Shown: positions 16,101 through 64,000 of the stretch, piece by piece
Numbering within the stretch: the stretch's first letter is position 1
Layout: every line of letters begins with the position of its first letter
Origin: Paramoeba atlantica
Taxonomy: Eukaryota; Protista; Discosea
Direction of reading: 5' to 3'
Assembly: GCA_977017575.1 (NCBI GenBank)
Contig: CDRNVI010000138.1
Span: forward strand, 40,214 to 104,213
DNA: 64,000 nucleotides
Made by a program: the position numbers and the translations under genes
The notes under the pieces: model-generated
Seen by the model: the letters and a program-made list of their open reading frames with translations, nothing else
Told to the model about the DNA's origin: nothing
Databases searched by the model: none

Positions 16101-19100
16101 CTCTTTGTTCTCTTTCTATGGACCATCTTGAACCTGTTTTGTTGGTTGGGGAGACTGGCTGTGGTTCTCTCTCTTCTCTCTTTCTTTTCTCTCTCTTTTT
16201 TATTTCTTTCTTCTCTTTTAAATTCCTTTTTTTAACCCCTGACCCTCTCTCTCTTTCCCTCTCTCTCCTTTTTCTTTTTTCTCCACCACAGGAAAGACGA
16301 CAGTGTGTCAAATATTGGCGGAATTATACAAAATTAAACTTCACACTTTAAATTGTCACCAACACACTGATACATCTGATTTATTGGGTTTTTCTCTCTT
16401 TTCTTTTCTTTCTCTTCTCCTCTCTTCTCCTCTCTTCTCCTCTCTTCTCCTCTCTTCTCCTCTCTTCTCTCCCTCAAAGATTCTCGATTTAATTCAAAAT
16501 CAAAAGGTTCTCTGCGCCCAGTCCGTGGAAAAGACCAAATTCGGATCAAATTGTGTTCCCTATTGCGGGCAATTTTTGAAGAATCATTTCAAAAAATGGA
16601 TGAGAGTCACAATGGAGAGGAAGAAGGAAAGAAAAGGAGTCACGGTGGTGTCACAAGGGATGACTTGGAGGTTGGGATTAAGAGTTTGAAAAATGGGGAA
16701 ATTGGGCGGGGTATAATTTCTACCTTTGAAAAAATTGTTAAAAGTGGAAAAGGAAAGAAGAATTTGAGTGATGCTCAGAAGATTATGGCTGAGGTTTTGA
16801 TTTTTTTTTCTCTTTCTTTCTCTTTCTCTTCATTTCTCACGTAAATAATAGTATCGTTCTCTCTTTGCATGGCATGATGGGCCAGTAGTACAAGCAATGA
16901 AAGAGGGTGGTCTCTTTTTGATGGATGAAGTCAGTCTTGCTGAAGATTCTGTTTTAGAGAGAATGAATAGGTTTTCCACTCCCCCTCATATCCCTTCTCT
17001 TTCTTCTCTCTTTCTCCTCTTCCATTTTTTTCTCTCTCCTCCCTCTCTCTCCTCCCCCTCTCTCCTCCCTCTCTTTCTTCCATTTCTAAAATCCCGAAAT
17101 CAGTATCCTGGAAGCAGACAGAACACTAGTATTACCAGAGAAAGGAGGAGAAGTCATCTGCCAAATTGTGGGACACCCCTCTTTTCGTGTTGTTGCTACT
17201 ATGAATCCTGGTGGTGATTTTGGAAAGAGAGAGCTTTCTCCTGCTTTGAGAAATCGGTTTGTATTTTTTTTTGTTCTTTTTTTTTTTTGGGGGGGGGGGG
17301 GATTTAAATTAGAATGAAAATACTTTTTTTGAAATGGATATTTTAAAAAAAAATCTTATAAATACCCAACAGATTCACCGAAACCTGGGTTCCAAATGTG
17401 GACAACCGTGATGACCTCTTACAAATTCTCTCAGAAAGAATGAAAATTCCCAAAACAGTCAATCCAAATTTTTCCTGTGAAATAATTGGAGGAAGAATTT
17501 TAGATTTTATTGATTGGTTAAAAAAAGAGAAAAATTTAACTCGTTTGGTTGTCAGTTTGAGAGATCTTTTGACTTGGATTCAATTTTTGAATGTTTGTTT
17601 TGATGATCTTTCTTCTTCTTCTTCTTCTTCTCGTGTTTTGAAGTGTTCTATTTCTTCGATTGATGAAGCGTGTGTTCATGGCGCTTTTTTGGTCATTTTA
17701 GATGGGTTTGATTTTTACTTTTTTTTTTCCTTTTTCATTTCAGATTTCTTTCTTCTTTTTGCTAATTTTTTTTCGTAGGCTTGGGACAACTGGATCAGGC
17801 ATTTTTTCGGTTGAAAATGTTCTCTCTCTTCAAAAAGAGTCTGTTCAATTTTTAGTTCATCATTTAGACCAATTGCAGCAAACCCGAATTTTAAAATCTG
17901 TTGGTTTTGAAATTTCAAAGACAGAAGAGAGAGAAAAGGAGAGAAGAAAGGGAGATGATGAAGATCAGTGTATTCCTCAATTTCGTCAGTTTGGAAATGT
18001 GACAACTTTTGGAATTGAGCCGTTTTATATTGAGTGTGGCGGGATTCCTGATAAGGGAGTCAATTATTCGTTGTGTGCTCCAACAACGTCACGGAATGTG
18101 TCACGATTGTTGAGGGGTATGCAATTGCCTAAACCTTTGTTGCTTGAAGGATCTCCTGGTGTTGGGAAAAGTATTTGACTTTTTTTTTTGTTGATGAAGA
18201 GAAAGAGGAGAGAGAAAAAGAGAGAAATTGAAATTTTCTAATTCATTTTCCTTTCTCAGCATCTCTCGTAATTGCGCTTGGTAAATCAGTTGGAAAAAAT
18301 ATTGTTCGAATCAACTTGTCAGAACAGACAGATATAATGGATTTACTTGGTTCTGATCTTCCTGTTGAGGGTGGGTCTGGTGGTGAGTTTGCATGGAGAG
18401 ATGGAATCCTTCTTTCAGCAATTAAAGCAGGTCCATTTTTTTTTTTTTAATTGAAAAATTTCTTTTCAACTCCTAATTTCATTTTCATTAAACAAAAAAC
18501 AAAAAAAAACAGGAGATTGGGTCTTATTAGATGAATTGAATCTTGCATCACAATCAGTGCTAGAAGGACTTAATGCAATTCTTGACCACAGAGCATCCAT
18601 TTTCATTCCAGAACTTGATCGATCTTTCAATTGTCCACCAGGATTTCGTGTATTTGCTTGTCAAAATCCTATCTCACAAGGAGGTGGTCGAAAAGGACTC
18701 CCTAAATCATTCCTCAACCGATTTACTCAAATTTACATTGATCCTCTCTCTTTTGATGATTATGTTTTTATTTTGGGGCAGTCGTTTGAGTCTCTTCCAA
18801 GCGAGCTTCTTTCCAAAATGGTTACTTTTAATTCTCTTCTTTTGGAGGAGGTCCAAAAGGGAATAGTGGGGCGAGTGGGTGGACCTTGGGAGTTAAATTT
18901 ACGAGATTTGGTTCGGTGGGGAGAATTGATGGTTGCGTCACAATCAGAGGAAATGGGGTGGAATCCTGGAGATTTTTTGGATATGATTTATTTACAAAGA
19001 ATGCGGACTATTACTGATCGTCAAGAAGTGGTTAAGATTTATAATCAAGTTTTTTCGAATGCAAAACTTTCTCTTTGTTCTGAGACACTGACTATTCGCC

Positions 19101-22100
19101 CTGTTACTGACGATGATGAGGATTCTATGTCTTCAAAATTGAAGAATTACAATCGAATCCGAATTCTCCCTTCCTATACCCAGATTGGAGGAACATTTCT
19201 TCCACGTGACGCTAGCCGTCCTCCTGCAACCTCTGATTTATCGACAATTCATCTTGATCCACCCCCTCTACTCGCTCTTCCCCCTCAATTGAGCATGGCG
19301 GAACACGTTATGAAGTGCGTTGAAATGAATTGGATGCCAATTTTAATTGGTCCCGCAGGAAGTGGAAAGACGTCACTCATTAGATATTTGGCAAAGTTGT
19401 CTGGGAGGGTATTAGATGTTTTTGCAATGAATAGCAGTGTTGATACCATGGAACTTTTGGGTGGATATGAGCAGGTGGAAGAAGGGAGATATCGAAGGCG
19501 GGTGATTGAGATTTTGTCCGATGTTGTTGAATGTCTTTTAAGGTGTTTATTATTGAGGTTTTATCAAGGTGAAGTGGAGGGTTTGAAGCGTCATAGTAAT
19601 GTTGATGCAACATTGAGTGCTGTAGGAGAGGGTCAGGTTTGTTTGGATAAGATGAATGAGATTTTGGATTTGTGGAGAGTTGTCAGGTTTCATCATCTTT
19701 CTTCTTCTTCTACTCCTTCTTCTTGGAAGGTGAAGAAAGAGATGGTGTTGCAGCTGTTTGGGTTGATTGAAAAAACTTCAGTTTCATTTTTCATTCCAAT
19801 TCCAACAACTCCCAACACTCAGAACAAACAAGAAGAATCGGAAACATCTTCTTCTCTCCCTTCCTCTCTCTTCTTTAACCACACAATCCACAAAACATGT
19901 TCGTCATCCCCTTCACTCCAAGAAACAAAAGCAACCATTCAACAATGGGCCGACATCCTCGCCGAACAGAGCGTCTCGGGAAAATTCGAGTGGGTCGATG
20001 GGATGCTCCTTCGAGCGATGCGAGATGGCCACTGGCTATTAATAGACAATGTCAATTTTTGTGCTCCAACAGTATTGGATCGTCTCAATCCGTTAGTAGA
20101 ACCAGGCGGCTCCCTAATTGTAAATGAAAGAGGCACACTCTCAAATGGGGAATTACATGTGGCAAAACCTCATCCAAATTTCCGGTTATTTTTGACTATG
20201 GATGCGGCGAGTGGGGAGGTGTCACGTGCAATGAGGAATCGGGGAGTCGAGATGGTGATTCTTCCCCCTTGTTCGTCAAGTGCTGCGGCTGGTTCTTTCT
20301 TTTTTCTTTTTTGTTTTCACTTCTCTCCTCTTGATTTAACATTTTTTATTCTTTTTTAGATACACTCATCAAAGCCGAAAAAGTCCCTCCAGTTTGGTCA
20401 TCCAATCTTCTCCACATTCATAAAATCTCAATGGAATTTCTCTCAAATCTCTCCTCATCTACACACAATGATTCAATCCGTCAACTGCTTCAATGTGTTC
20501 GGTTAACAATTCAGCAACTTGAGTTAGGGAGTCACGTTTCTTCTTCGCTTTGTCACTCAATTTATCAGGTTTATGGTGGAGATGTAGTCACGTTTTTGAG
20601 AGAGGGAGAGAGAGAGAAGGAAAAAGAGGAAGGAGAGAATGTGGTGATGGAAGAGAGAGAATCTTCTCTTTCTTCTTCTCTTTCTTCTCTTTCTTCTTCA
20701 TCTATCTCGACCCACTCTCTTCTCTGTGGTTGGAAAGAGTTCTCTCCTTCTCTATTTCAAGATTCTTCTCTCTCCTCTCTCTCTTCTTCTGTCTCTCTTC
20801 TCTTTGATGTTTCTTCTCTTCTCGCCAACCAATATCTCTCCTTTTTGTTTTGGAAAGAGAGAGAAGAGAAAGAAGAAGAAAAAGAGAAAGAAAGGAGAGT
20901 GATGGTGAAAGAATATATTGAAATAGATCCTTTGTGTCTTCGTTCTGTTGAACCCTCTCTTCTTTCTGAAATCTCTTGTCCTTCTTCTCTCTCTCCTTCT
21001 TCTCCTTCCTCTTCTTCTTCTTTCCCATTCTCTACTCTCTCTACTCTCTCTTGTCAAGTTCCAAAAGAACCTCTCTCACCTTTAAAAGGAGTCTCTCTTG
21101 AGAATTTAGGAACAATTTTGGTTTCTTTGATTGTCGAAATTATCCCTTCTTCTCTTTCTCCTCTCTCTTTTCTCTCTTCTTCTTCTTCTTCTCTTCCTCT
21201 CTCTTCTTCCCAAAAAGAAGAACTTTCGAAAATGATTCTTCTTTCTCTCACTCCAGTTAAAACAATTTTGAAAATTTCAAGAAAAGTGAGAGCGGAAAGA
21301 AAAATTGAGAAGGGAGAAAAGAAAATAAAGAGAGAAGGAGAAGAAGAAAAAGAGACTGAAAGAGAGAGAGAAGAGAGAGAGAAAGAAGAGAGGTGGGAGA
21401 GAAAACTTTCTCTTTTTGTGGAGCAAGTGGAGTGGGGTGTTTCTGCTCTTTGTTTTGTTTATCAAAACGACGCAGTTTTTTCTCTACAAAATGTAGTAAA
21501 GGAGAAATTGTTTTCTTCTCTTTCTTCTTCTTCTTCTCTTTCTTCTTCTCTCTCTCCTTCTCTCTTTCTTCTTACAGATCAACCTCTTGACGTGTTTCAA
21601 AATGAGCCTCTCTTTCGTCAATTATTTGGTTTTTTTTCTTTATTATATTTTCTTCTTTTTTTTCTTTTCATTCTCTTTCTTTTTCTGACACTACTCAAAA
21701 AAGGGAGAGAGAGAGAAGAGAGAGAAAAGAGAAAGAGAGGATTTGCGCCTTTGTTTCCTTCAACAGATACAGCTCTCTTATTGTGTGGAGAGAGAAGAGA
21801 GAGAGAAGAGAATAGTGAAGGAGAGAAAGAAGAAGAAATATCTTCTCTTTCATCTCTTTCTTCTCTCTTGAAGTTGGCATATTTTCTCTCTTTTCAAGAG
21901 AAAAAAGAGAAGTTTCTTTTTGAGAGGTTTCTTTTTTTATTTCTTTCTTGAATTTTTCTTCTTCTTTGTTGTTAATACAATTTCTTTTTTTTTTTTTATT
22001 TTTTAGTGCAACATCAAAAGAAGATGAAGACAAAACACTGCTTCAAATGTCACGTGAAACCTATTTCCAAAAATTGGACCCCTCCGATCTCCCTCCTCTT

Positions 22101-57882: not shown

Positions 57883-59691
57883 TCAATTTACAATTTGTTC
57901 ATAATCACTTTTTGACATCAAAGCTCTTCTTGAAAAAATCATCTCTTTCCACCAACCACAAAAAAGAGAATTTGACCAAAGGAGAATCATACCAGCAGCA
58001 CCAGGAAGGATTGCGGTGAACATAAACAAAAATATGAAGGGTTCTCCAGTATCAAACTTCCGTTCGCATGGTGGTGGGCTCTCTTGCGGGTGAGAAGCAA
58101 CACAATCCATGAAATGAACAATCGTTGAATCTGAAATGCTATTTACTGTCACGGCATACAAAAATGTGAAGAAAGCGACAATAACACCGAAAAAACCAAA
58201 GAGGAGCGATCTCCTATCAAAAAATATGAGATAAAAACAATTTTGTTGAGAAAAAAAAAACTAAAATTTAACCATTGGAAGTAAATGATTTCTCTTCCTC
58301 GTTTCAGATAGAGAACGACGCTTGTGACACAAAGGATGGCACTAATGGATGTTTCAACGAGAAGGGGATAATCAAGGAGAGCATTGAAAACCTGATTATC
58401 TGTTTCTGATGGAAAGGCATAAATTGGTAATGGGATAGAATGTCGAGAGTTTGATGTGAGCCCATAAGTTAAGCATGTGACAGACAGCACAAGAGAGAAG
58501 CAAATACACAACCCTTCCATTAAAATTATGATTCTTGGGTTGACTGGTTGTTTGATAAACTTTTCAAAGAATGTTGTGTGCGATCTGATTTGAGGGAGTT
58601 AAGAGAACTTAAGAAATAACTTTGAAAAAGAGAGTTTTTGGATGAACCTCATTGAAGAACAGAAGAGGTTGAAGCAGAAGAGCAGCCAGTGAGTAAAAGC
58701 CAGATGAACAAAGAGAGCCCAAAGAGAAAATTGGACTGAAGATCGTGTTGAATTGTCAAAGGAATCGACAGCTTTCCAATAATCTTTCATTCCATCACAA
58801 ACAAAAGTGTGTGCTCCACCTGTCTTTGTTCGTCAGATTCGCAAAGAAAAAGGAAGGGCCGATGAAACATGAAACAAACCAGCAAAGGTGGCCCAAGCAA
58901 GTGATAAGTATGCAAAGGGGAAACTTCCAAAACAAAGAAAAATGATGTAGTTTGGATACCTATTGGCGAAAAATGATGTTGAAAAAAATACAAAAAGAAA
59001 AGAGAGAGAAACAAAGAAATAACCCTAAATTGTTCATAAAGTATTGGGGGAGAACCGCAATTCCCAAAATCACAAGAGAAATAAAGGAGAAAAAACAACT
59101 TAAAATTGACAACCATTTCTCTAATGTTTCTCCAAAAAGGTATTGATAACACTCGACAACACATTCACCATTATCATCAGAAATAAAAGGATCAGGACAA
59201 CACTCAATTTGCTCCTTTGAATTATTCAAACATGTTTCTACTGCAATTGGTGTCTCTTTTACTTGAGAAATTTGTTTCTGCACTTTTTCTTGACAGTCAT
59301 TTGTTGGTGTTGATGGCGAAGAGAAAACAAAGGAAGAGCAGTTGAGTTCAAAATCGCTCGAACAAGCACCAGAAACTTGGATACAATACTCTTTTTCCAA
59401 ACAGAGCTGTTCTTCAAGAGACGAAGATTCACATGAAAAAGAACCAAACTTCAATTGACAATAATAAGACAAAAATGGTCGTCGACAAGTTTCTTGAACC
59501 ATTCGAACATCAGAAACAACCAACGAAACATTCGCATCAAAGAAATTTTTTTGTTCGCTCTCTTCAATCAACACCTCCCCAAACAGCACGCCTGTACATT
59601 CATTTTGAAGACTATAATGAAAACATTCACTTTTATCAGCATGGCAAAAGGAAGGAAGAACAAGAAGGGTCCATGCGAACACCAACCACAT
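57883..59691 (-). CDS. Frizzled/Smoothened-like 7TM receptor with signal peptide and Cys-rich extracellular domain
   Basis: Signal peptide MWLVFAWTLLVLPSFCHA, a CRD-like Cys pattern, a CPDPF...CVVEC linker, and about seven hydrophobic segments over several exons. The ORF-track start at 59748 is GTG; the first ATG is at 59691. Confidence 0.7.
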
Positions 59692-59932
59692 CCAAACTCT
59701 GCTTCTTTTCCCAAAAAATAAAAAAAGTATTTTTGTCCGACCCGTCACTCAAAATAAAGAGAAAAAGTCCCGACTCAATCTTTTCGGGAATTCTCTCTCC
59801 TCTCGCTTTATTTTTTCCGCTTTCTCCTCCTTTTTTTCTCTCTCTTCTTTCACAACTTTTTTGGAACCCGCAGAAAAAACCTCTTCTCTTCTCTTCTCTT
59901 CTCTTCTCTCTGTGTCACACAAAAAAAAGAAG

Positions 59933-60905
59933 ATGGATGATGATGATGATGAAGAATATCCAAAGAAACAGAGGAACTTTTTGAGTGTGGAGATGAAGAA
60001 GTTGTGAAAGTTCTTCTTGGAAACAAAAACAAACAATTTGAACTTGATATCAACTTCCACTTCAAAAACAAGAAGGTTTTTTTTTTTCAAACTCAATTTC
60101 TCTCTCTTTCTCTTTTCTCTCTCTCTCTTTTGTTGTTCTGATGGATTTTATTTGTTGTTGTGGGTTCATTGTTGGGTTGTTTCATGTGTGTTGTGTTGAT
60201 ATTTCTTTTGTTTTTATTCTTTTTTTAACAACTTTCTTTTTGTTAAAAGGATGGATGGACTGCTCTTCACATAGCTGCTTCCAAAGGTTTTGAACAAATT
60301 GTGAAAATTCTTGTTGAACATGGATCCGATGTTGATCTTCAAAACACAGTTTTGATTTTCATCATTTTCTCATTTTTATTTGTTGTTGTGGGTTCATTGT
60401 TAGTTTGTGTCATGTTGATTGTGAACAGTTGTGTTGTATGGTATTTCTTTTGTTTTTATTCTTTTTTTAACAACTTCTTTTTGTTAAAGTGTGGATGGAC
60501 CACTCTTCACTGTGCTGCTAATAGAGGTTTTGAACAAACTGTGAAAATTCTTATTGAACACAGATCCAACATTAATATTCAATCCCTAGTTTTCATTTCT
60601 TTTTCTTTTTTCTTTAATATTTTTGTTGCAACAGTTGATTTGTTGAATTGTGATGGGTGGGTGGGTGGGTGGGTGGGAAATGAAGAGTTGGAGGGGTTTG
60701 GAGTGGTTTTTTTTTAAACTCTCTTTTTTCTTATTTTTTTATTGTGTTAGGATGGGAAAACAGTGCTTGATGTTGCAAAAGATCAGAACATTGTTGCATT
60801 GATCATCCAATTGAAGGTTTTAATTTTTATTTCTCTCTCTTCTTTTTTTTTTGACATTTTCATCATTTCTTTCAATTTCCTTTCTTTTGATTGTTGTAGG
60901 GATGA
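59933..60905 (+). pseudogene. Short ankyrin-repeat gene, apparently frameshifted near its start
   Basis: 99-nt phase-0 exons DGWTALHIAASKGFEQIVKILVEHG and CGWTTLHCAANRGFEQTVKIL with near-duplicated introns. The ATG at 59933 is out of frame with ELFECGDEEVVKVLL. An assembly indel is possible. Confidence 0.65.
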
Positions 60906-61352
60906 ACAATAAAACCAGCTCAATCAACAAAAAGAGAAAATTAAAGTTTTGACAATAAAAAAACAACAATTTTCTTGGAGATATTTTGAAACATCTCAGA
61001 AATATTTTCAAAAAATCTCAAAGATATGTCAAGAAAAGAAGAAAACTAAATATTTGGAGATATTCTGAGTTTCTTAGATATCTCAAGACAACTTCAACTT
61101 TATTGACCAATCAAAACAAAACACATTGGCATTTTGAGTGAAAAACTTGAATATTTGAAGATTTCTCAGAGCAGTTTCAAGATTTCTCAAAATTTTTAAG
61201 ATTTCTTTCCAATTGTTACAATTATTTGTCACACAATTGAGCCCAGAAAAGGGCCTTTCTAAGAAAGTTTGTGAATATTGAGTGCCCTCCAGAAAAAACA
61301 ACATTCAAGAGGTTTAAGAAATCAAGAAAGAATCAATTTCAGGTGTTTAAAG

Positions 61353-61578
61353 TTAACCCTTTGGCCCCTTATAATGCATATTTGCATCATAAAAATGCTT
61401 TTTCAAAAGTTGAGATCTCTCACTTAGAGTGAGAAAAAGAAAATTAAAAAAAAATCAACAAATAGAGAGAAGGAATCTTTTTTAGTCTTCTCCTCTTTTT
61501 TGAATAAAAACTATTTCAATTCAACCCAGCACCATGCAAATCAAAAAAAGATTTTTATGATGCAAATGTGCATTATAA
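61353..61578. mobile_element. Possible piggyBac-like terminus with an internal 28-bp inverted repeat
   Basis: TTAA followed by CCCTTT at 61353-61362. Arms 61369-61396 and 61551-61578 are reverse complements with one mismatch. I found no matching opposite end. Confidence 0.3.
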
Positions 61579-61611
61579 AAAATTTCTGTTTTGTGGATAT
61601 GTTCCCAAATA

Positions 61612-62035
61612 GGGTTGGTGCCCGTAGTTTAGTCGTAAATTCAACTATGTCCAACTCCAGGGGGGCGAGTTCAAATCCCAGTTTTTCAATATTATGGAAA
61701 ATTTTTCTGGTGCTGTAGAGTGATTTGATTGGAGTGAGGAGCTCTTGAAGAAGTGTGAAAATCGGAACAGGTTACATCTCAGCCCTGTCTGCTAAAAAGT
61801 TGAGGATAAATTCCCTTGGAAGGAGCTTTGGATTATTCTCCCTTCTGATGTGCATCCTCCAGCCTGAACTTGCAGAAGTTCTAAAGTTCAACATAAAGAC
61901 CGACTGAACTAAGCTGAAGTTTAAAACTTCACCTCTCATTAGAGGTTAAAAACAAACATAATTTAATGTAATTCAAATGGCTTAGATTAAGAACTACTAA
62001 TTGAATAAAGTCTGCCTCAAAAAGAAAAAAAAAAA
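61612..62035 (+). mobile_element. tRNA-headed SINE-like retroposon, ~424 bp
   Basis: Perfect 16-bp direct repeats GATATGTTCCCAAATA at 61596-61611 and 62036-62051. A-box-like TAGTTTAGTCG (61625) and B-box GTTCAAATCC (61669) lie at tRNA spacing. AATAAA precedes an A-rich tail. Confidence 0.75.
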
Positions 62036-62358
62036 GATATGTTCCCAAATAAATTCTAAAACAGGACAATTTTTTTTCTGTTTTTCTTTTTTTTTTTTTG
62101 GTTTTTTTTATCAAACCAATTTTACCTTTTTTTTAGTAAAAAGGGGTTTTAAACAGGTTGGTTTTGGGTGGTCAGAACCCAACAACTTTTTTGGATTTGA
62201 GGGTGTATCTTCATTCCTCACAATCACAAAATTCCTTGATAAGAGTTTCATTTTTCAAAAGCCCAGAAAAATTCATTCAGAATCAACTTCTCTGCCTCCA
62301 AAAAAAAAAAAAATAGAGGGTTCAAGATACAATTAACAAACAGAGAAATGGTGCAGAG

Positions 62359-63095
62359 TCAAAAACTATGCCTTGAATGAACTACTTTGTGAAATCCATA
62401 AGTTAGCAATGTGCTTTGATGAGATAGAATTCACCCATGTACCCTGAGAACTTAACAAGTGAGCTGATGCAATTGCAACTGCTGCAAGTTGGTCTAAAGA
62501 GGATGGAACATGTGCTGTGAATGACCATCATTGGGATCCAAGATCACAACATGTTGCAGAAACCAGTGAAGAGTGGATTATTTTGAATTCAACCCTGTGG
62601 AACTGGATCAATTCCCCCCTCACCCGTGACTGGACTTTCCCCATCCCCCCAGGGAATTTTGTAAGGAAATTCCAAGGAAACATGGTGACAACCCCCCATG
62701 TTTTGTTTCTGACCCAAACTGCTCTTGAGAATGCTCTAATTCTCCCTGTAATAATTACTAAAGATATCCAAGGATGGTTCCATCAGTTCCAAGAGAGCAA
62801 TCTGGTGAGGAGCTTTATTGAGGAAGATTTTCAAAGAAATGTAATTAACTTCATAGAAACCTCCAAACCAAATTCACTCCTTGGTTTTAGAAGGCAAACA
62901 ATCAAACACAAACCCCTTAGTGAGAACTAAAGTTGGTAAAGAAACTCCAATGCATCCCATGCTGAAGAGATCTTTGGATCTAACTCTTAATTTATCTTCC
63001 CTCCCCCCCCCCTTTCTTCCCCCCTCTTTTCCATCCTAGAGATGGTTTTTAACTCTAATAAATGGCACCTGGTGTCTGAACCTTAAAAAAAAAAA
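62359..63095 (+). mobile_element. 5'-truncated non-LTR retrotransposon (LINE): RNase H C-terminus, C-terminal extension, 3' UTR, poly(A)
   Basis: 17-bp TSD AGAGAAATGGTGCAGAG at 62342-62358 and 63095-63111. Frame FDEIEFTHVP*ELNK*ADAIATAA continues into ORF 62517-62930. AATAAA at 63057, A-run 63085-63095. Confidence 0.85.
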
Positions 63096-63357
63096 GAGAA
63101 ATGGTGCAGAGATGAAACTGAGAAATAAACTCAGAAATCAAATCAGGGAAAAACAAGAGTGAGAGCTTTATTTTGACTTTGGTACTTAGCACTAACTATT
63201 CACAGAATGCAGAGGGCAAAGGACTAAGTCACCAAGTTCACCAAAAGGAAAAATGGAGGTTTGGGAACTGGATCAGCAATTCATTGAAGGGGAGAAATGG
63301 ATCAAAAGAGTGACATCATCATTGGAACAAAAAGACCACAAGCAAGCCTTAGGCTAT

Positions 63358-63681
63358 TGTCAATTGACACTCCCAGTTGAGTCCTCTACGGAATAGTATG
63401 GAGATAGAGACAAGAACAGAGAACAAGAACAAAGAACAAAGAAAGAACAAGCTTGGTTCAATGTCTTTTATCAAATGCGTTCCAAAAGCCAAAAAGAACA
63501 AAAGAAAGTTTACACTCTTTCGCCCACAAATGGGTCCAAAGAACAAAACCTCTTTTGTACAAAAAAGGGCAACAAATAATTTACAATTATTCACAATCGG
63601 AAAACACACACAAAACAGTTCAGTGTTTCTGCTCACCAACAAAACGACAAAGTCAACAAAACCAACTATGACAACCCAACA
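63358..63681 (-). mobile_element. Probable 3' LTR of a Ty3/Gypsy chromovirus
   Basis: On the minus strand a G-run polypurine tract (GCGGGGGG) abuts TGT, and the segment ends in TTGACA. An alternative start at 63673 gives TGTCA...TGACA termini. It lies downstream of a chromodomain ORF, and CpG reappears at this boundary. Confidence 0.65.
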
Positions 63682-63788
63682 CCCCCCGCAAGTGCACTTG
63701 CTCGCAATTCACGACACACAATAAAAACAAAACAAAACAAAAAGAACAAAACAACCAACACAACAAGCATCACAACAGAAATAGTTCC

Positions 63789-63957
63789 TCATTTCTTCTT
63801 TACATGCCGTGTCGATTTTCTCCACTTTGCATTGTATTCTCGAATCACATCATCTGCCAAAAAATCACTCGCAGGTTGCCAAGATGTCTCATCATAATAT
63901 TTCCATTTGACAAGGTACTCCTTCTCACCATCTTTGCCCCGATCATCCAAAATTTTC
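63789..63957 (-). CDS. Chromodomain, C-terminus of an LTR-retrotransposon integrase, interrupted by a LINE insertion
   Basis: KILDDRGKDGEKEYLVKWKYYDETSWQPASDFLADDVIREY fits the chromodomain consensus (EYLVKW.GY...TWEP). Confidence 0.8.
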
Positions 63958-64000
63958 TTTTTTTTTTTTAAAGGTTCAGACACCAGGTGCCATTTATTAG
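63958..64000 (-). mobile_element. 3' end and poly(A) of a second copy of the same LINE (continues beyond the window)
   Basis: The reverse complement CTAATAAATGGCACCTGGTGTCTGAACCTT is identical to 63055-63084, followed by one extra T and a 12-nt A-run. Confidence 0.85.

What the first reader, a model, noticed from the sequence alone, without database searches (positions are those of the whole stretch)
59871..63357. Sharply bounded CpG-void domain of about 3.5 kb
I count 7 CG dinucleotides in 59871-63357, five of them in the SINE. The 730 bp just to the left has about 20, and normal levels return to the right of 63358. The domain covers the ankyrin gene and the old TEs. Established knowledge: 5mC deaminates to T. 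Inference: repeat-targeted CpG methylation, or a RIP-like process, acts in a genome whose ordinary genes keep CpG.
Basis: partly seen in the sequence, partly recalled or inferred. Interest (0 to 1): 0.75.

Follow-up and report, generated by a model that had tools for sequence, protein, structure and literature searches.

The report
CpG-decayed repeat island at contig end
A 3.5-kb stack of nested mobile elements and a broken ankyrin gene copy has lost almost all its CG pairs through C-to-T changes, the usual footprint of DNA methylation confined to repeats. The enzyme cannot be looked for here, because the assembly holds under a tenth of this organism's genome.

Summary
Window 59871-63357 has 7 CpG against 66 GpC, while the 59.9 kb to its left has 1088 against 1078 (Fisher p 6e-13). 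The loss happened in place. Against their own repeat families, the copies in the domain kept 0 of 7, 1 of 12 and 5 of 10 ancestral CpGs. Every loss is a CG>TG or CG>CA change, retention follows the order of nesting, and almost nothing else has changed.

The sharp right border is the junction with a younger LTR-retrotransposon end that kept 11 of 11 ancestral CpGs. The left border is the CpG-bearing 5' region of an ordinary gene. The ankyrin gene is a damaged member of a large gene family.

Repeat-confined cytosine methylation followed by deamination is the best reading. A RIP-like process is not excluded.

The assembly mixes two eukaryotes: a complete intron-less kinetoplastid and about 8% of the intron-rich organism that holds this window.

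The scan has noted the same footprint many times on other DNA of this genome. It is a new member of a known kind, of modest interest.

The parts
59738..59870 (.). CpG-bearing 5' or intergenic region of the ordinary minus-strand neighbour gene (ORF 58960-59748). It forms the left border.
   Evidence: 7 CpG in 133 bp, the last at 59869. The next 1750 bp hold a single CpG.
59881..59909 (.). (CTCTT)n microsatellite upstream of the ankyrin gene
   Evidence: Sequence. Matches simple repeats in other loci.
59933..60944 (+). Ankyrin-repeat gene copy. Its five exons are 59933-60075, 60250-60348, 60490-60588, 60751-60816 and 60900-60944. It is probably a pseudogene.
   Evidence: Pfam Ank hits on exons 2 and 3, E 6e-11 and 7.5e-8. 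GT/AG borders and reading frames checked. The exon-1 ATG is out of frame with the ankyrin frame, whereas a C163 paralogue is intact. The second codon of the last exon is TGA where C163 paralogues have CGA. CG:GC in 59871-60920 is 1:10. The family has at least 220 matches on contigs C140-C235.
60945..61595 (.). Unclassified DNA with no CpG. It holds a 35-bp inverted repeat at 61369-61403 and 61545-61578.
   Evidence: The interval 60921-61611 has 0 CG and 13 GC. The inverted repeat appeared as minus-strand self-matches. The listed rows show no other copy; 70 rows were not listed.
61596..61611 (.). Target-site duplication of the SINE, GATATGTTCCCAAATA. The second copy is at 62036-62051.
   Evidence: The two 16-mers are identical.
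61612..62035 (+). tRNA-like-headed SINE with an A-rich tail. It kept 5 of 10 ancestral CpGs.
   Evidence: 43 matches (164 first-look candidates), 40 of them near-full-length copies at 96-98% identity. In the family alignment of 40 copies the window copy has 5 CpG transitions, 2 other C>T, 2 A/T transitions and 0 transversions.
62052..62334 (.). Unclassified DNA between the SINE and repeat Y, with no CpG
   Evidence: The interval 62036-62358 has 0 CG and 3 GC. Only simple-sequence matches were found among the loci held.
62335..62358 (+). Head of repeat Y. Y was split by the 737-bp element and resumes at 63112.
   Evidence: Five other Y copies begin with the same 24 bases and have unrelated left flanks.
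62359..63094 (+). 737-bp poly(A) retroposon inserted into Y. Its 17-bp target-site duplication AGAGAAATGGTGCAGAG lies at 62342-62358 and 63095-63111. It kept 1 of 12 ancestral CpGs.
   Evidence: About 40 full-length copies at 87-98% identity, nearly all starting at the same base. TSDs are identical. The copy has 6 TG and 5 CA losses, 5 other C>T, 1 A/T transition and 0 transversions.
63112..63372 (+). Body of repeat Y, cut off on the right by the LTR element. It kept 0 of 7 candidate ancestral CpGs.
   Evidence: Copies on C209 (three), C171, C199 and C153. In the alignment all 9 differences of the window copy are C>T or G>A. Y continues beyond this point in L074 and L075.
63375..63682 (-). 308-bp LTR at the 3' end of a chromodomain-bearing LTR retrotransposon. 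It forms the right border and kept 5 of 5 ancestral CpGs.
   Evidence: Solo 308-bp matches and paired matches 4.8-6 kb apart on C178, C167, C193, C142 and C199. Retention counts.
63683..63958 (-). Internal end of the same retrotransposon, carrying the chromodomain ORF 63789-63983. It kept 6 of 6 ancestral CpGs.
   Evidence: Pfam Chromo, E 2e-7. Family alignment.
63960..64000 (-). 3' end of a second, inverted copy of the 737-bp family, followed by the end of contig C138
   Evidence: It is the reverse complement of 63050-63085. Locus L001 is cut at C138:104213, which is window position 64000.

Best explanation
The domain is a stack of repeated DNA near a contig end. Its base is a damaged member of an amplified ankyrin gene family, unclassified DNA and a short repeat (Y). 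Two retroposons later inserted into that base. All of it has undergone cytosine-to-thymine change in place, on both strands, about 25-70 times faster at CpG than at other cytosines, until nearly every CpG was gone.

The most likely cause is heritable 5-methylcytosine confined to repeats and silent genes, followed by spontaneous deamination. The neighbouring expressed genes are unmethylated and keep their CpGs.

The borders are historical rather than active. On the left is the 5' region of an ordinary gene. On the right is a younger LTR-retrotransposon insertion that has not yet decayed.

Shown: the deficit itself, its direction, its decay in place, its dependence on insertion order and its restriction to repeated DNA. 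Inferred: that methylation is the agent.
For: 1. CG:GC is 7:66 in the domain against 1088:1078 in the rest of the window, with a TpG/CpA excess.

2. Changes polarised against the families. The 737-bp copy kept 1 of 12 ancestral CpGs, with 6 TG and 5 CA losses. The SINE kept 5 of 10 and Y kept 0 of 7. Together they show 9 other C>T changes, 3 A/T transitions and no transversions. Odds ratio for CpG versus non-CpG C/G positions is 38, p 4e-18.

3. Losses are private and independent. At every site of the 737-bp family some copies carry TG and others CA.

4. Retention follows the nesting order fixed by intact target-site duplications: Y 0%, then the 737-bp element inside it 8%, then the SINE 50%, then the LTR piece that truncates Y 100%. 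Y against the LTR piece gives p 8e-5.

5. Three LTR pairs differ by 17 C>T/G>A changes, 2 A<>G changes and 0 transversions, and most of the C>T changes are at CpG.

6. Decay depends on place, not only on age. L014 keeps 12 of 12 CpGs in CpG-normal flanks. Flank CpG o/e correlates with CpG retention (rho 0.49, p 0.009).

7. The ankyrin copy has TGA where paralogues have CGA, and the C218 paralogue is 0 CG: 26 GC, while the C163 array keeps 36:61.

8. G+C of the domain (34%) is close to the window mean (36%), and C>T and G>A changes interleave. The process is therefore CpG-specific and two-stranded.

9. Repressive CpG methylation of transposable elements and silent genes, without gene-body methylation, is documented in Acanthamoeba and Cyanophora (bioRxiv 10.1101/2025.04.15.648976).
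Against: No methylation data are available. No C5-methyltransferase (PF00145) or SRA domain (PF02182) was found in the assembly. This carries almost no weight, because control families show that only about 8% of this organism's genes are present.

Elsewhere some SINE, LTR and Y copies carry 16-45 non-CpG C>T changes with two or fewer other changes. CpG-only methylation does not explain these. They need non-CG methylation or a separate hypermutation process.

For the ankyrin kilobase alone the deficit is only borderline against its CpG-poor family (1:10 versus 36:61).
Confidence: 0.6

Rival explanations
1. A RIP-like, homology-triggered hypermutation (RID/DNMT-like or deaminase-driven) hits duplicated DNA in bursts, with CpG as its preferred context. 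Methylation would then be secondary or absent.
For: The spectrum is almost purely C>T/G>A with no transversions. The distribution is heavy-tailed. Most SINE copies have 0-4 non-CpG C>T changes, but six distinct copies have 13-45 with two or fewer other changes, often next to another copy. One Y copy has 16. Every part of the domain with a known family is repeated DNA, including the ankyrin gene. CpG-context (TpCpG) RIP-like hypermutation is known in Pucciniomycotina (PMC3318451).
Against: In this domain the loss is CpG-specific, with almost no drop in G+C (34% against a window mean of 36%) and graded retention that follows insertion order. That looks clock-like, not burst-like. Short units are affected (308-bp LTR, 283-bp Y). 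Ankyrin paralogues only 65-83% identical are CpG-void in some places (C218) but not in a dense tandem array (C163), where RIP should be strongest. There is no CpA or TpC preference among non-CpG sites.
Confidence: 0.2
2. Repeat-rich, late-replicating or poorly repaired chromatin raises C>T at CpG without 5mC. Weak uracil or T:G mismatch repair, or another cytosine modification, could do this.
For: The enzyme search is blank. The decay depends on place.
Against: From established knowledge, I know of no mechanism that gives a 25-70-fold CpG preference without methylation. The blank search is uninformative.
Confidence: 0.1
3. No special process is at work. The inserted families are CpG-poor by nature, or simply old.
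For: The ankyrin family is AT-rich and low in both CpG and GpC, even in the C163 array. The 737-bp ancestor already has a CpG o/e of only 0.36.
Against: Other family members retain 10-12 of 12, 8-10 of 10 and 7 of 7 CpGs at the very sites where the window copies carry TG or CA. A/T-site and transversion divergence of the window copies is about 0.3%.
Confidence: 0.05
4. It is an artefact: a chimeric join, or systematic base-calling errors at modified CpGs in a long-read assembly.
For: The domain lies at a contig end in a two-organism assembly.
Against: All repeats of the domain occur only on contigs of the same intron-rich organism. Target-site duplications are exact. The void includes 1.3 kb with no CpG at all, and errors would need to be near 100% and site-specific. 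Even this artefact would imply methylation.
Confidence: 0.03

Closest known systems
Repressive CpG methylation of transposable elements and silent genes without gene-body methylation, as mapped in Acanthamoeba castellanii and Cyanophora paradoxa and compared there with fungi and diatoms (Sarre et al., bioRxiv 10.1101/2025.04.15.648976)
   Same: Repeats and a silent, damaged gene copy carry the mark's footprint. Ordinary expressed genes nearby show none. CpG is the preferred context.
   Different: Only the mutational footprint is seen here, with no methylome. The organism is unidentified. Some copies elsewhere show heavy non-CpG C>T change, which recalls the all-context methylation reported for Naegleria in the same paper more than the Acanthamoeba pattern does.
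RIP and RIP-like TpCpG hypermutation in Pucciniomycotina (Horns et al. 2012, PMC3318451)
   Same: C>T transitions on repeated DNA, a CpG-centred target and both strands affected.
   Different: In this domain there is almost no drop in G+C, and the decay is graded by insertion order. There is no evidence of a fungal host, of a RID gene or of a link to a sexual cycle. TpCpG preference could not be tested with 10-12 sites per family.
CpG decay of methylated transposable elements in vertebrate genomes (e.g. PMC12582260)
   Same: The same chemistry and read-out: methylated elements lose CpG to TpG/CpA, and young insertions are still CpG-rich.
   Different: There the whole genome is depleted and islands are the exception. 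Here the genome keeps CpG and depleted islands are the exception.

Membership tests
5mC-driven CpG decay of methylated repeats | CpG deficit with matching TpG/CpA excess, not explained by base composition | tested here: met
   CG:GC is 7:66 against 1088:1078. TpG and CpA o/e are 1.28 and 1.24 against 0.93 and 0.98.
5mC-driven CpG decay of methylated repeats | Polarised CG>TG and CG>CA changes in place, far above other substitution types | tested here: met
   23 of 29 ancestral CpGs were lost in the window's copies, against 9 of about 540 other C/G positions. LTR pairs show 17 of 19 differences as C>T/G>A.
5mC-driven CpG decay of methylated repeats | Confined to repeats and silent genes, while active genes keep CpG | tested here: met
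   1-59870 has CG:GC of 1.01. Every part of the domain with a recognisable family is repeated DNA.
5mC-driven CpG decay of methylated repeats | 5-methylcytosine actually present on this DNA | not testable with these tools
   No read-level or bisulfite data are available.
5mC-driven CpG decay of methylated repeats | A C5 DNA methyltransferase gene (DNMT1/3/5 or similar) in the same genome | tested here: inconclusive
   PF00145 gave no candidates even at E<=10, and PF02182 gave none. Controls show only 1 of 14 proteasome genes, 1 of about 9 CCT/HSP60 genes and 0 NSUN genes on this organism's contigs.
Fungal RIP | C>T/G>A transitions limited to duplicated DNA | tested here: met
   The spectrum is transitions only and lies on repeat families. 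Unclassified parts of the domain cannot be judged.
Fungal RIP | Characteristic dinucleotide target: CpA in Neurospora, TpCpG in Pucciniomycotina | tested here: inconclusive
   CpG is preferred 5-19-fold. CpA shows no preference over CpT or CpC. There are too few CpG sites to test TpCpG.
Fungal RIP | Marked AT enrichment and nonsense-riddled sequence in affected DNA | tested here: not met
   The domain's G+C is 34% against 36% for the window. Ankyrin exons 2-4 are open. Some copies elsewhere do show this.
Fungal RIP | RID-type methyltransferase-like gene and premeiotic timing | not testable with these tools
   The genome is about 8% represented and there are no life-cycle data.
APOBEC-type editing of retroelement cDNA | Strand-specific G>A on the element's sense strand | tested here: not met
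   C>T and G>A are about equal and interleaved in the window copies and in hypermutated copies, for example 28:30 and 26:25.

The most novel reading that the evidence does not exclude
The intron-rich amoeba-like organism runs a repeat-triggered, CpG-first cytosine hypermutation of the RIP type outside the fungi. It would act without a canonical DNMT and be able to convert a third of all cytosines in some copies.
Probability: 0.12. Interest if true: 0.8.

Novelty: new member of a known kind. Interest (0 to 1): 0.3.

Why it matters
The domain gives a clean, datable record of repeat-confined cytosine decay in an unsampled protist: four nested insertions with 0, 8, 50 and 100% CpG retention. This fits the view that repressive methylation of transposable elements is ancestral in eukaryotes.

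For the scan itself the more useful result is that this assembly is a mixture. One part is a complete kinetoplastid. The other is roughly a tenth of a second eukaryote. Any claim about this genome that rests on a gene being absent, including the earlier 'no methylation enzymes' note, needs re-reading. Notes that merge 'amoeba' and 'trypanosome-like' traits may be describing two different organisms.

Tried and rejected
- Rfam and ARAGORN on the window found nothing.
- The ESM Atlas search with a midasin fragment gave no usable taxonomy.
- Two exact-protein look-ups aimed at naming the source record found nothing, because records of this genome are left out.
- A literature search by assembly statistics found nothing relevant.
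Small fetches still worked.
- Strand-run analysis gave one copy (L010) at p 0.003 and a few strand-biased copies (L006, L024, L029). Across about 24 copies this is not convincing, and the window copy gave p 0.21. I dropped it as evidence for a processive deaminase.
- Pfam found no domain in the 137-aa ORF of the 737-bp element.
- The TET/JBP-carrying transposon noted earlier in the scan was not recovered by PF12851. That search hit only the kinetoplastid JBP1/JBP2-like genes.
- I did not use the large protein search. Nothing in the claim depended on it, and it returns no organism names.
- The ankyrin exons were searched one by one by reference.
- I do not take this contig for human.
- Changes were polarised with column majorities over short pieces (738 bp or less, and a 584-bp end piece of the LTR element).
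Full report
OBSERVATION

The count is exact. Window 59871-63357 holds 7 CG, five of them in the SINE. The 730 bp to the left holds 20 and the 643 bp to the right holds 13.

The whole window is low in both CpG and GpC because of purine and pyrimidine tracts, so I used GpC as the control. CG:GC is 7:66 in the domain and 1088:1078 in 1-59870 (Fisher p 5.6e-13). No other stretch of the same length falls below 26 CG. The three longest CpG-free gaps of the window all lie inside the domain. TpG and CpA are raised. The domain is real and far beyond chance.

WHOSE GENOME THIS IS

The assembly (45.7 Mb, 248 contigs) holds two eukaryotes.

- The window's midasin gene is split by introns. A second midasin, only 47-54% identical, is one uninterrupted 4576-codon frame on C14 and C23.
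- All NSUN, CCT/HSP60 and proteasome genes with long open frames lie on contigs C2-C103, mostly in near-identical pairs.
- Every copy of the window's repeats lies on C137-C239.
- The intron-less partner has JBP1- and JBP2-like genes. From established knowledge this marks a kinetoplastid.
- On the intron-rich organism's contigs I found 1 of 14 proteasome subunit genes, 1 of about 9 CCT/HSP60 genes and no NSUN gene. Roughly 8% of its gene set is present.
- The four-exon CCT hit on C140 shows that the search does see split genes.

It follows that the blank searches for PF00145 and PF02182 say nothing about this organism. The same applies to the earlier scan note s1-405743, which reported that none of the usual enzymes could be found.

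I could not name the organism. It is not human: genes are dense, introns are 100-250 bp and CpG is normal in genes. An amoeba paired with a kinetoplastid recalls Paramoeba with its Perkinsela symbiont. That comes from memory and was not tested.

ANATOMY

From left to right:

- The CpG-bearing 5' region of an ordinary minus-strand gene, to 59870.
- A (CTCTT)n tract.
- A five-exon ankyrin gene, 59933-60944.
- 650 bp of unclassified DNA.
- A 424-bp SINE (61612-62035) with an exact 16-bp target-site duplication.
- 280 bp of unclassified DNA.
- A short repeat, Y, split after its first 24 bases by a 737-bp poly(A) element (62359-63094) with an exact 17-bp duplication.
- The rest of Y, to 63372.
- The 308-bp LTR and chromodomain end of an LTR retrotransposon on the minus strand (63375-63958).
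- The inverted end of another 737-bp copy, then the end of the contig.

Sources for this layout are. Y continues in other copies beyond the point where the window's copy stops. So the LTR element inserted into Y.

DIRECTION OF CHANGE

I aligned each family and inferred ancestral CpGs as sites where some copies have CG and the rest have TG or CA.

| Element (window copy) | Ancestral CpGs kept | Other changes |
|---|---|---|
| 737-bp element | 1 of 12 (6 TG, 5 CA) | 5 other C>T, 1 A/T transition, 0 transversions |
| SINE | 5 of 10 | 2 other C>T, 2 A/T transitions |
| Y | 0 of 7 | all 9 differences are C>T or G>A |
| LTR piece | 11 of 11 | not tallied here |

CpG positions mutated 38 times more often than other C/G positions (p 4e-18). 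At each site different copies carry TG or CA, so the losses are independent events and not inherited subfamily states.

Retention follows nesting order: Y, then the element inside it, then the SINE, then the LTR that truncates Y.

Three LTR pairs, identical when they inserted, differ by 17 C>T/G>A changes, 2 A<>G changes and no transversions. That is an unbiased record of change in place.

Decay also depends on place. A copy in CpG-normal flanks keeps 12 of 12, and flank CpG o/e correlates with retention (rho 0.49, p 0.009).

THE ANKYRIN GENE

It belongs to a family with at least 220 DNA matches. The family is built from a 240-bp exon-plus-intron module, often in tandem arrays.

- The closest array, on C163, keeps CpG (36 CG: 61 GC).
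- A paralogue on C218 has 0 CG: 26 GC.
- The window copy has 1 CG : 10 GC.

Its first exon has the ATG out of frame with the ankyrin frame, whereas the C163 paralogue is intact. The second codon of its last exon is TGA where C163 copies have CGA. It is therefore a decaying copy, not an ordinary host gene.

Taken alone, this kilobase is only borderline against its CpG-poor family.

MECHANISM

Several features fit spontaneous deamination of 5mC in DNA that is methylated mainly at CpG:

- The spectrum is transitions only.
- It strikes both strands, interleaved.
- It is strongly CpG-first.
- It barely lowers G+C.
- It is graded by insertion age.

Such methylation would be confined to repeats and silent genes. 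This pattern has been mapped in Acanthamoeba and Cyanophora.

Strand-specific cDNA editing is excluded.

A RIP-like process remains possible. Elsewhere a minority of copies carry 13-45 non-CpG C>T changes with almost nothing else, which CpG-only methylation does not explain. All-context methylation, as reported for Naegleria, or a separate hypermutation could explain those copies. The window's domain itself shows only the CpG-specific regime.

BORDERS

The right border is an age discontinuity at an insertion junction. The left border is the edge of an active gene's 5' region. Neither requires a dedicated boundary element.

STANDING

The scan's first readers noted the same footprint on many other stretches of this genome, and one follow-up reached a similar reading. 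This is a new example of a known kind of genome defence footprint. Its main added value is the dated stratigraphy and the recognition that the assembly is a mixture.

METHOD NOTES

Column majorities over short repeat pieces were used only to polarise changes.

Noticed in passing
whole assembly; e.g. C14:302316-306413 versus window 18539-20356: The assembly is a mixture of two eukaryotes. One is a complete, intron-less, JBP1/JBP2-bearing kinetoplastid on contigs up to about C103, mostly as near-identical contig pairs. The other is about 8% of an intron-rich organism on contigs C137 and above. Earlier notes that call this genome both 'amoeba' and 'trypanosome-like' may be mixing the two.
   Followed up: yes
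L013:1044-1467, L034:1-424, L063:2096-3300, L032:2882-3300 (SINE copies): Six distinct SINE copies are hypermutated. They carry 24-58 C>T/G>A changes on both strands with two or fewer other changes, while most copies have 0-4 non-CpG changes. The distribution is heavy-tailed, and the hypermutated copies are often next to another copy.
   Followed up: partly
window 59933-60944; C163:76100-82600, C178:90500-98000, C190:158900-167800, C148:54000-57500: The ankyrin gene family has at least 220 DNA matches. It is built from a 240-bp unit of one 33-codon exon plus its intron, repeated in tandem inside genes and in gene arrays. Intron sequence is conserved at 70-83% between copies.
   Followed up: partly
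L010 (C165:19891-20628); also L006, L024, L029: In a few copies of the 737-bp family the CpG losses form strand runs, for example TG x4 then CA x7 (runs-test p 0.003), or show strong strand bias (11:2, 10:1, 17:6). This is not significant across all copies.
   Followed up: partly
window 61369-61403 and 61545-61578: A 35-bp inverted repeat flanks about 140 bp inside the unclassified CpG-free stretch. It could be a small foldback or MITE relic.
   Followed up: no
window 60656-60678: A (GGGT)n run lies inside the third ankyrin intron and is conserved in the C163 paralogues. It has potential to form a G-quadruplex.
   Followed up: no
L036:1501-1924, L033:1505-1930, L032:1501-1924: CpG-intact SINE copies (8-10 of 10 kept) sit in flanks with no CpG at all over 2 kb. 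Young insertions land inside old CpG voids, as the LTR piece does in this window.
   Followed up: partly
C178:114645-120212, C167:139574-145505, C193:12202-16990, C142:47738-53742, C199:22059-27627: Full-length copies, 4.8-6 kb long, of the chromodomain-bearing LTR retrotransposon whose 3' end forms the right border of the domain. The LTRs are 308 bp.
   Followed up: partly
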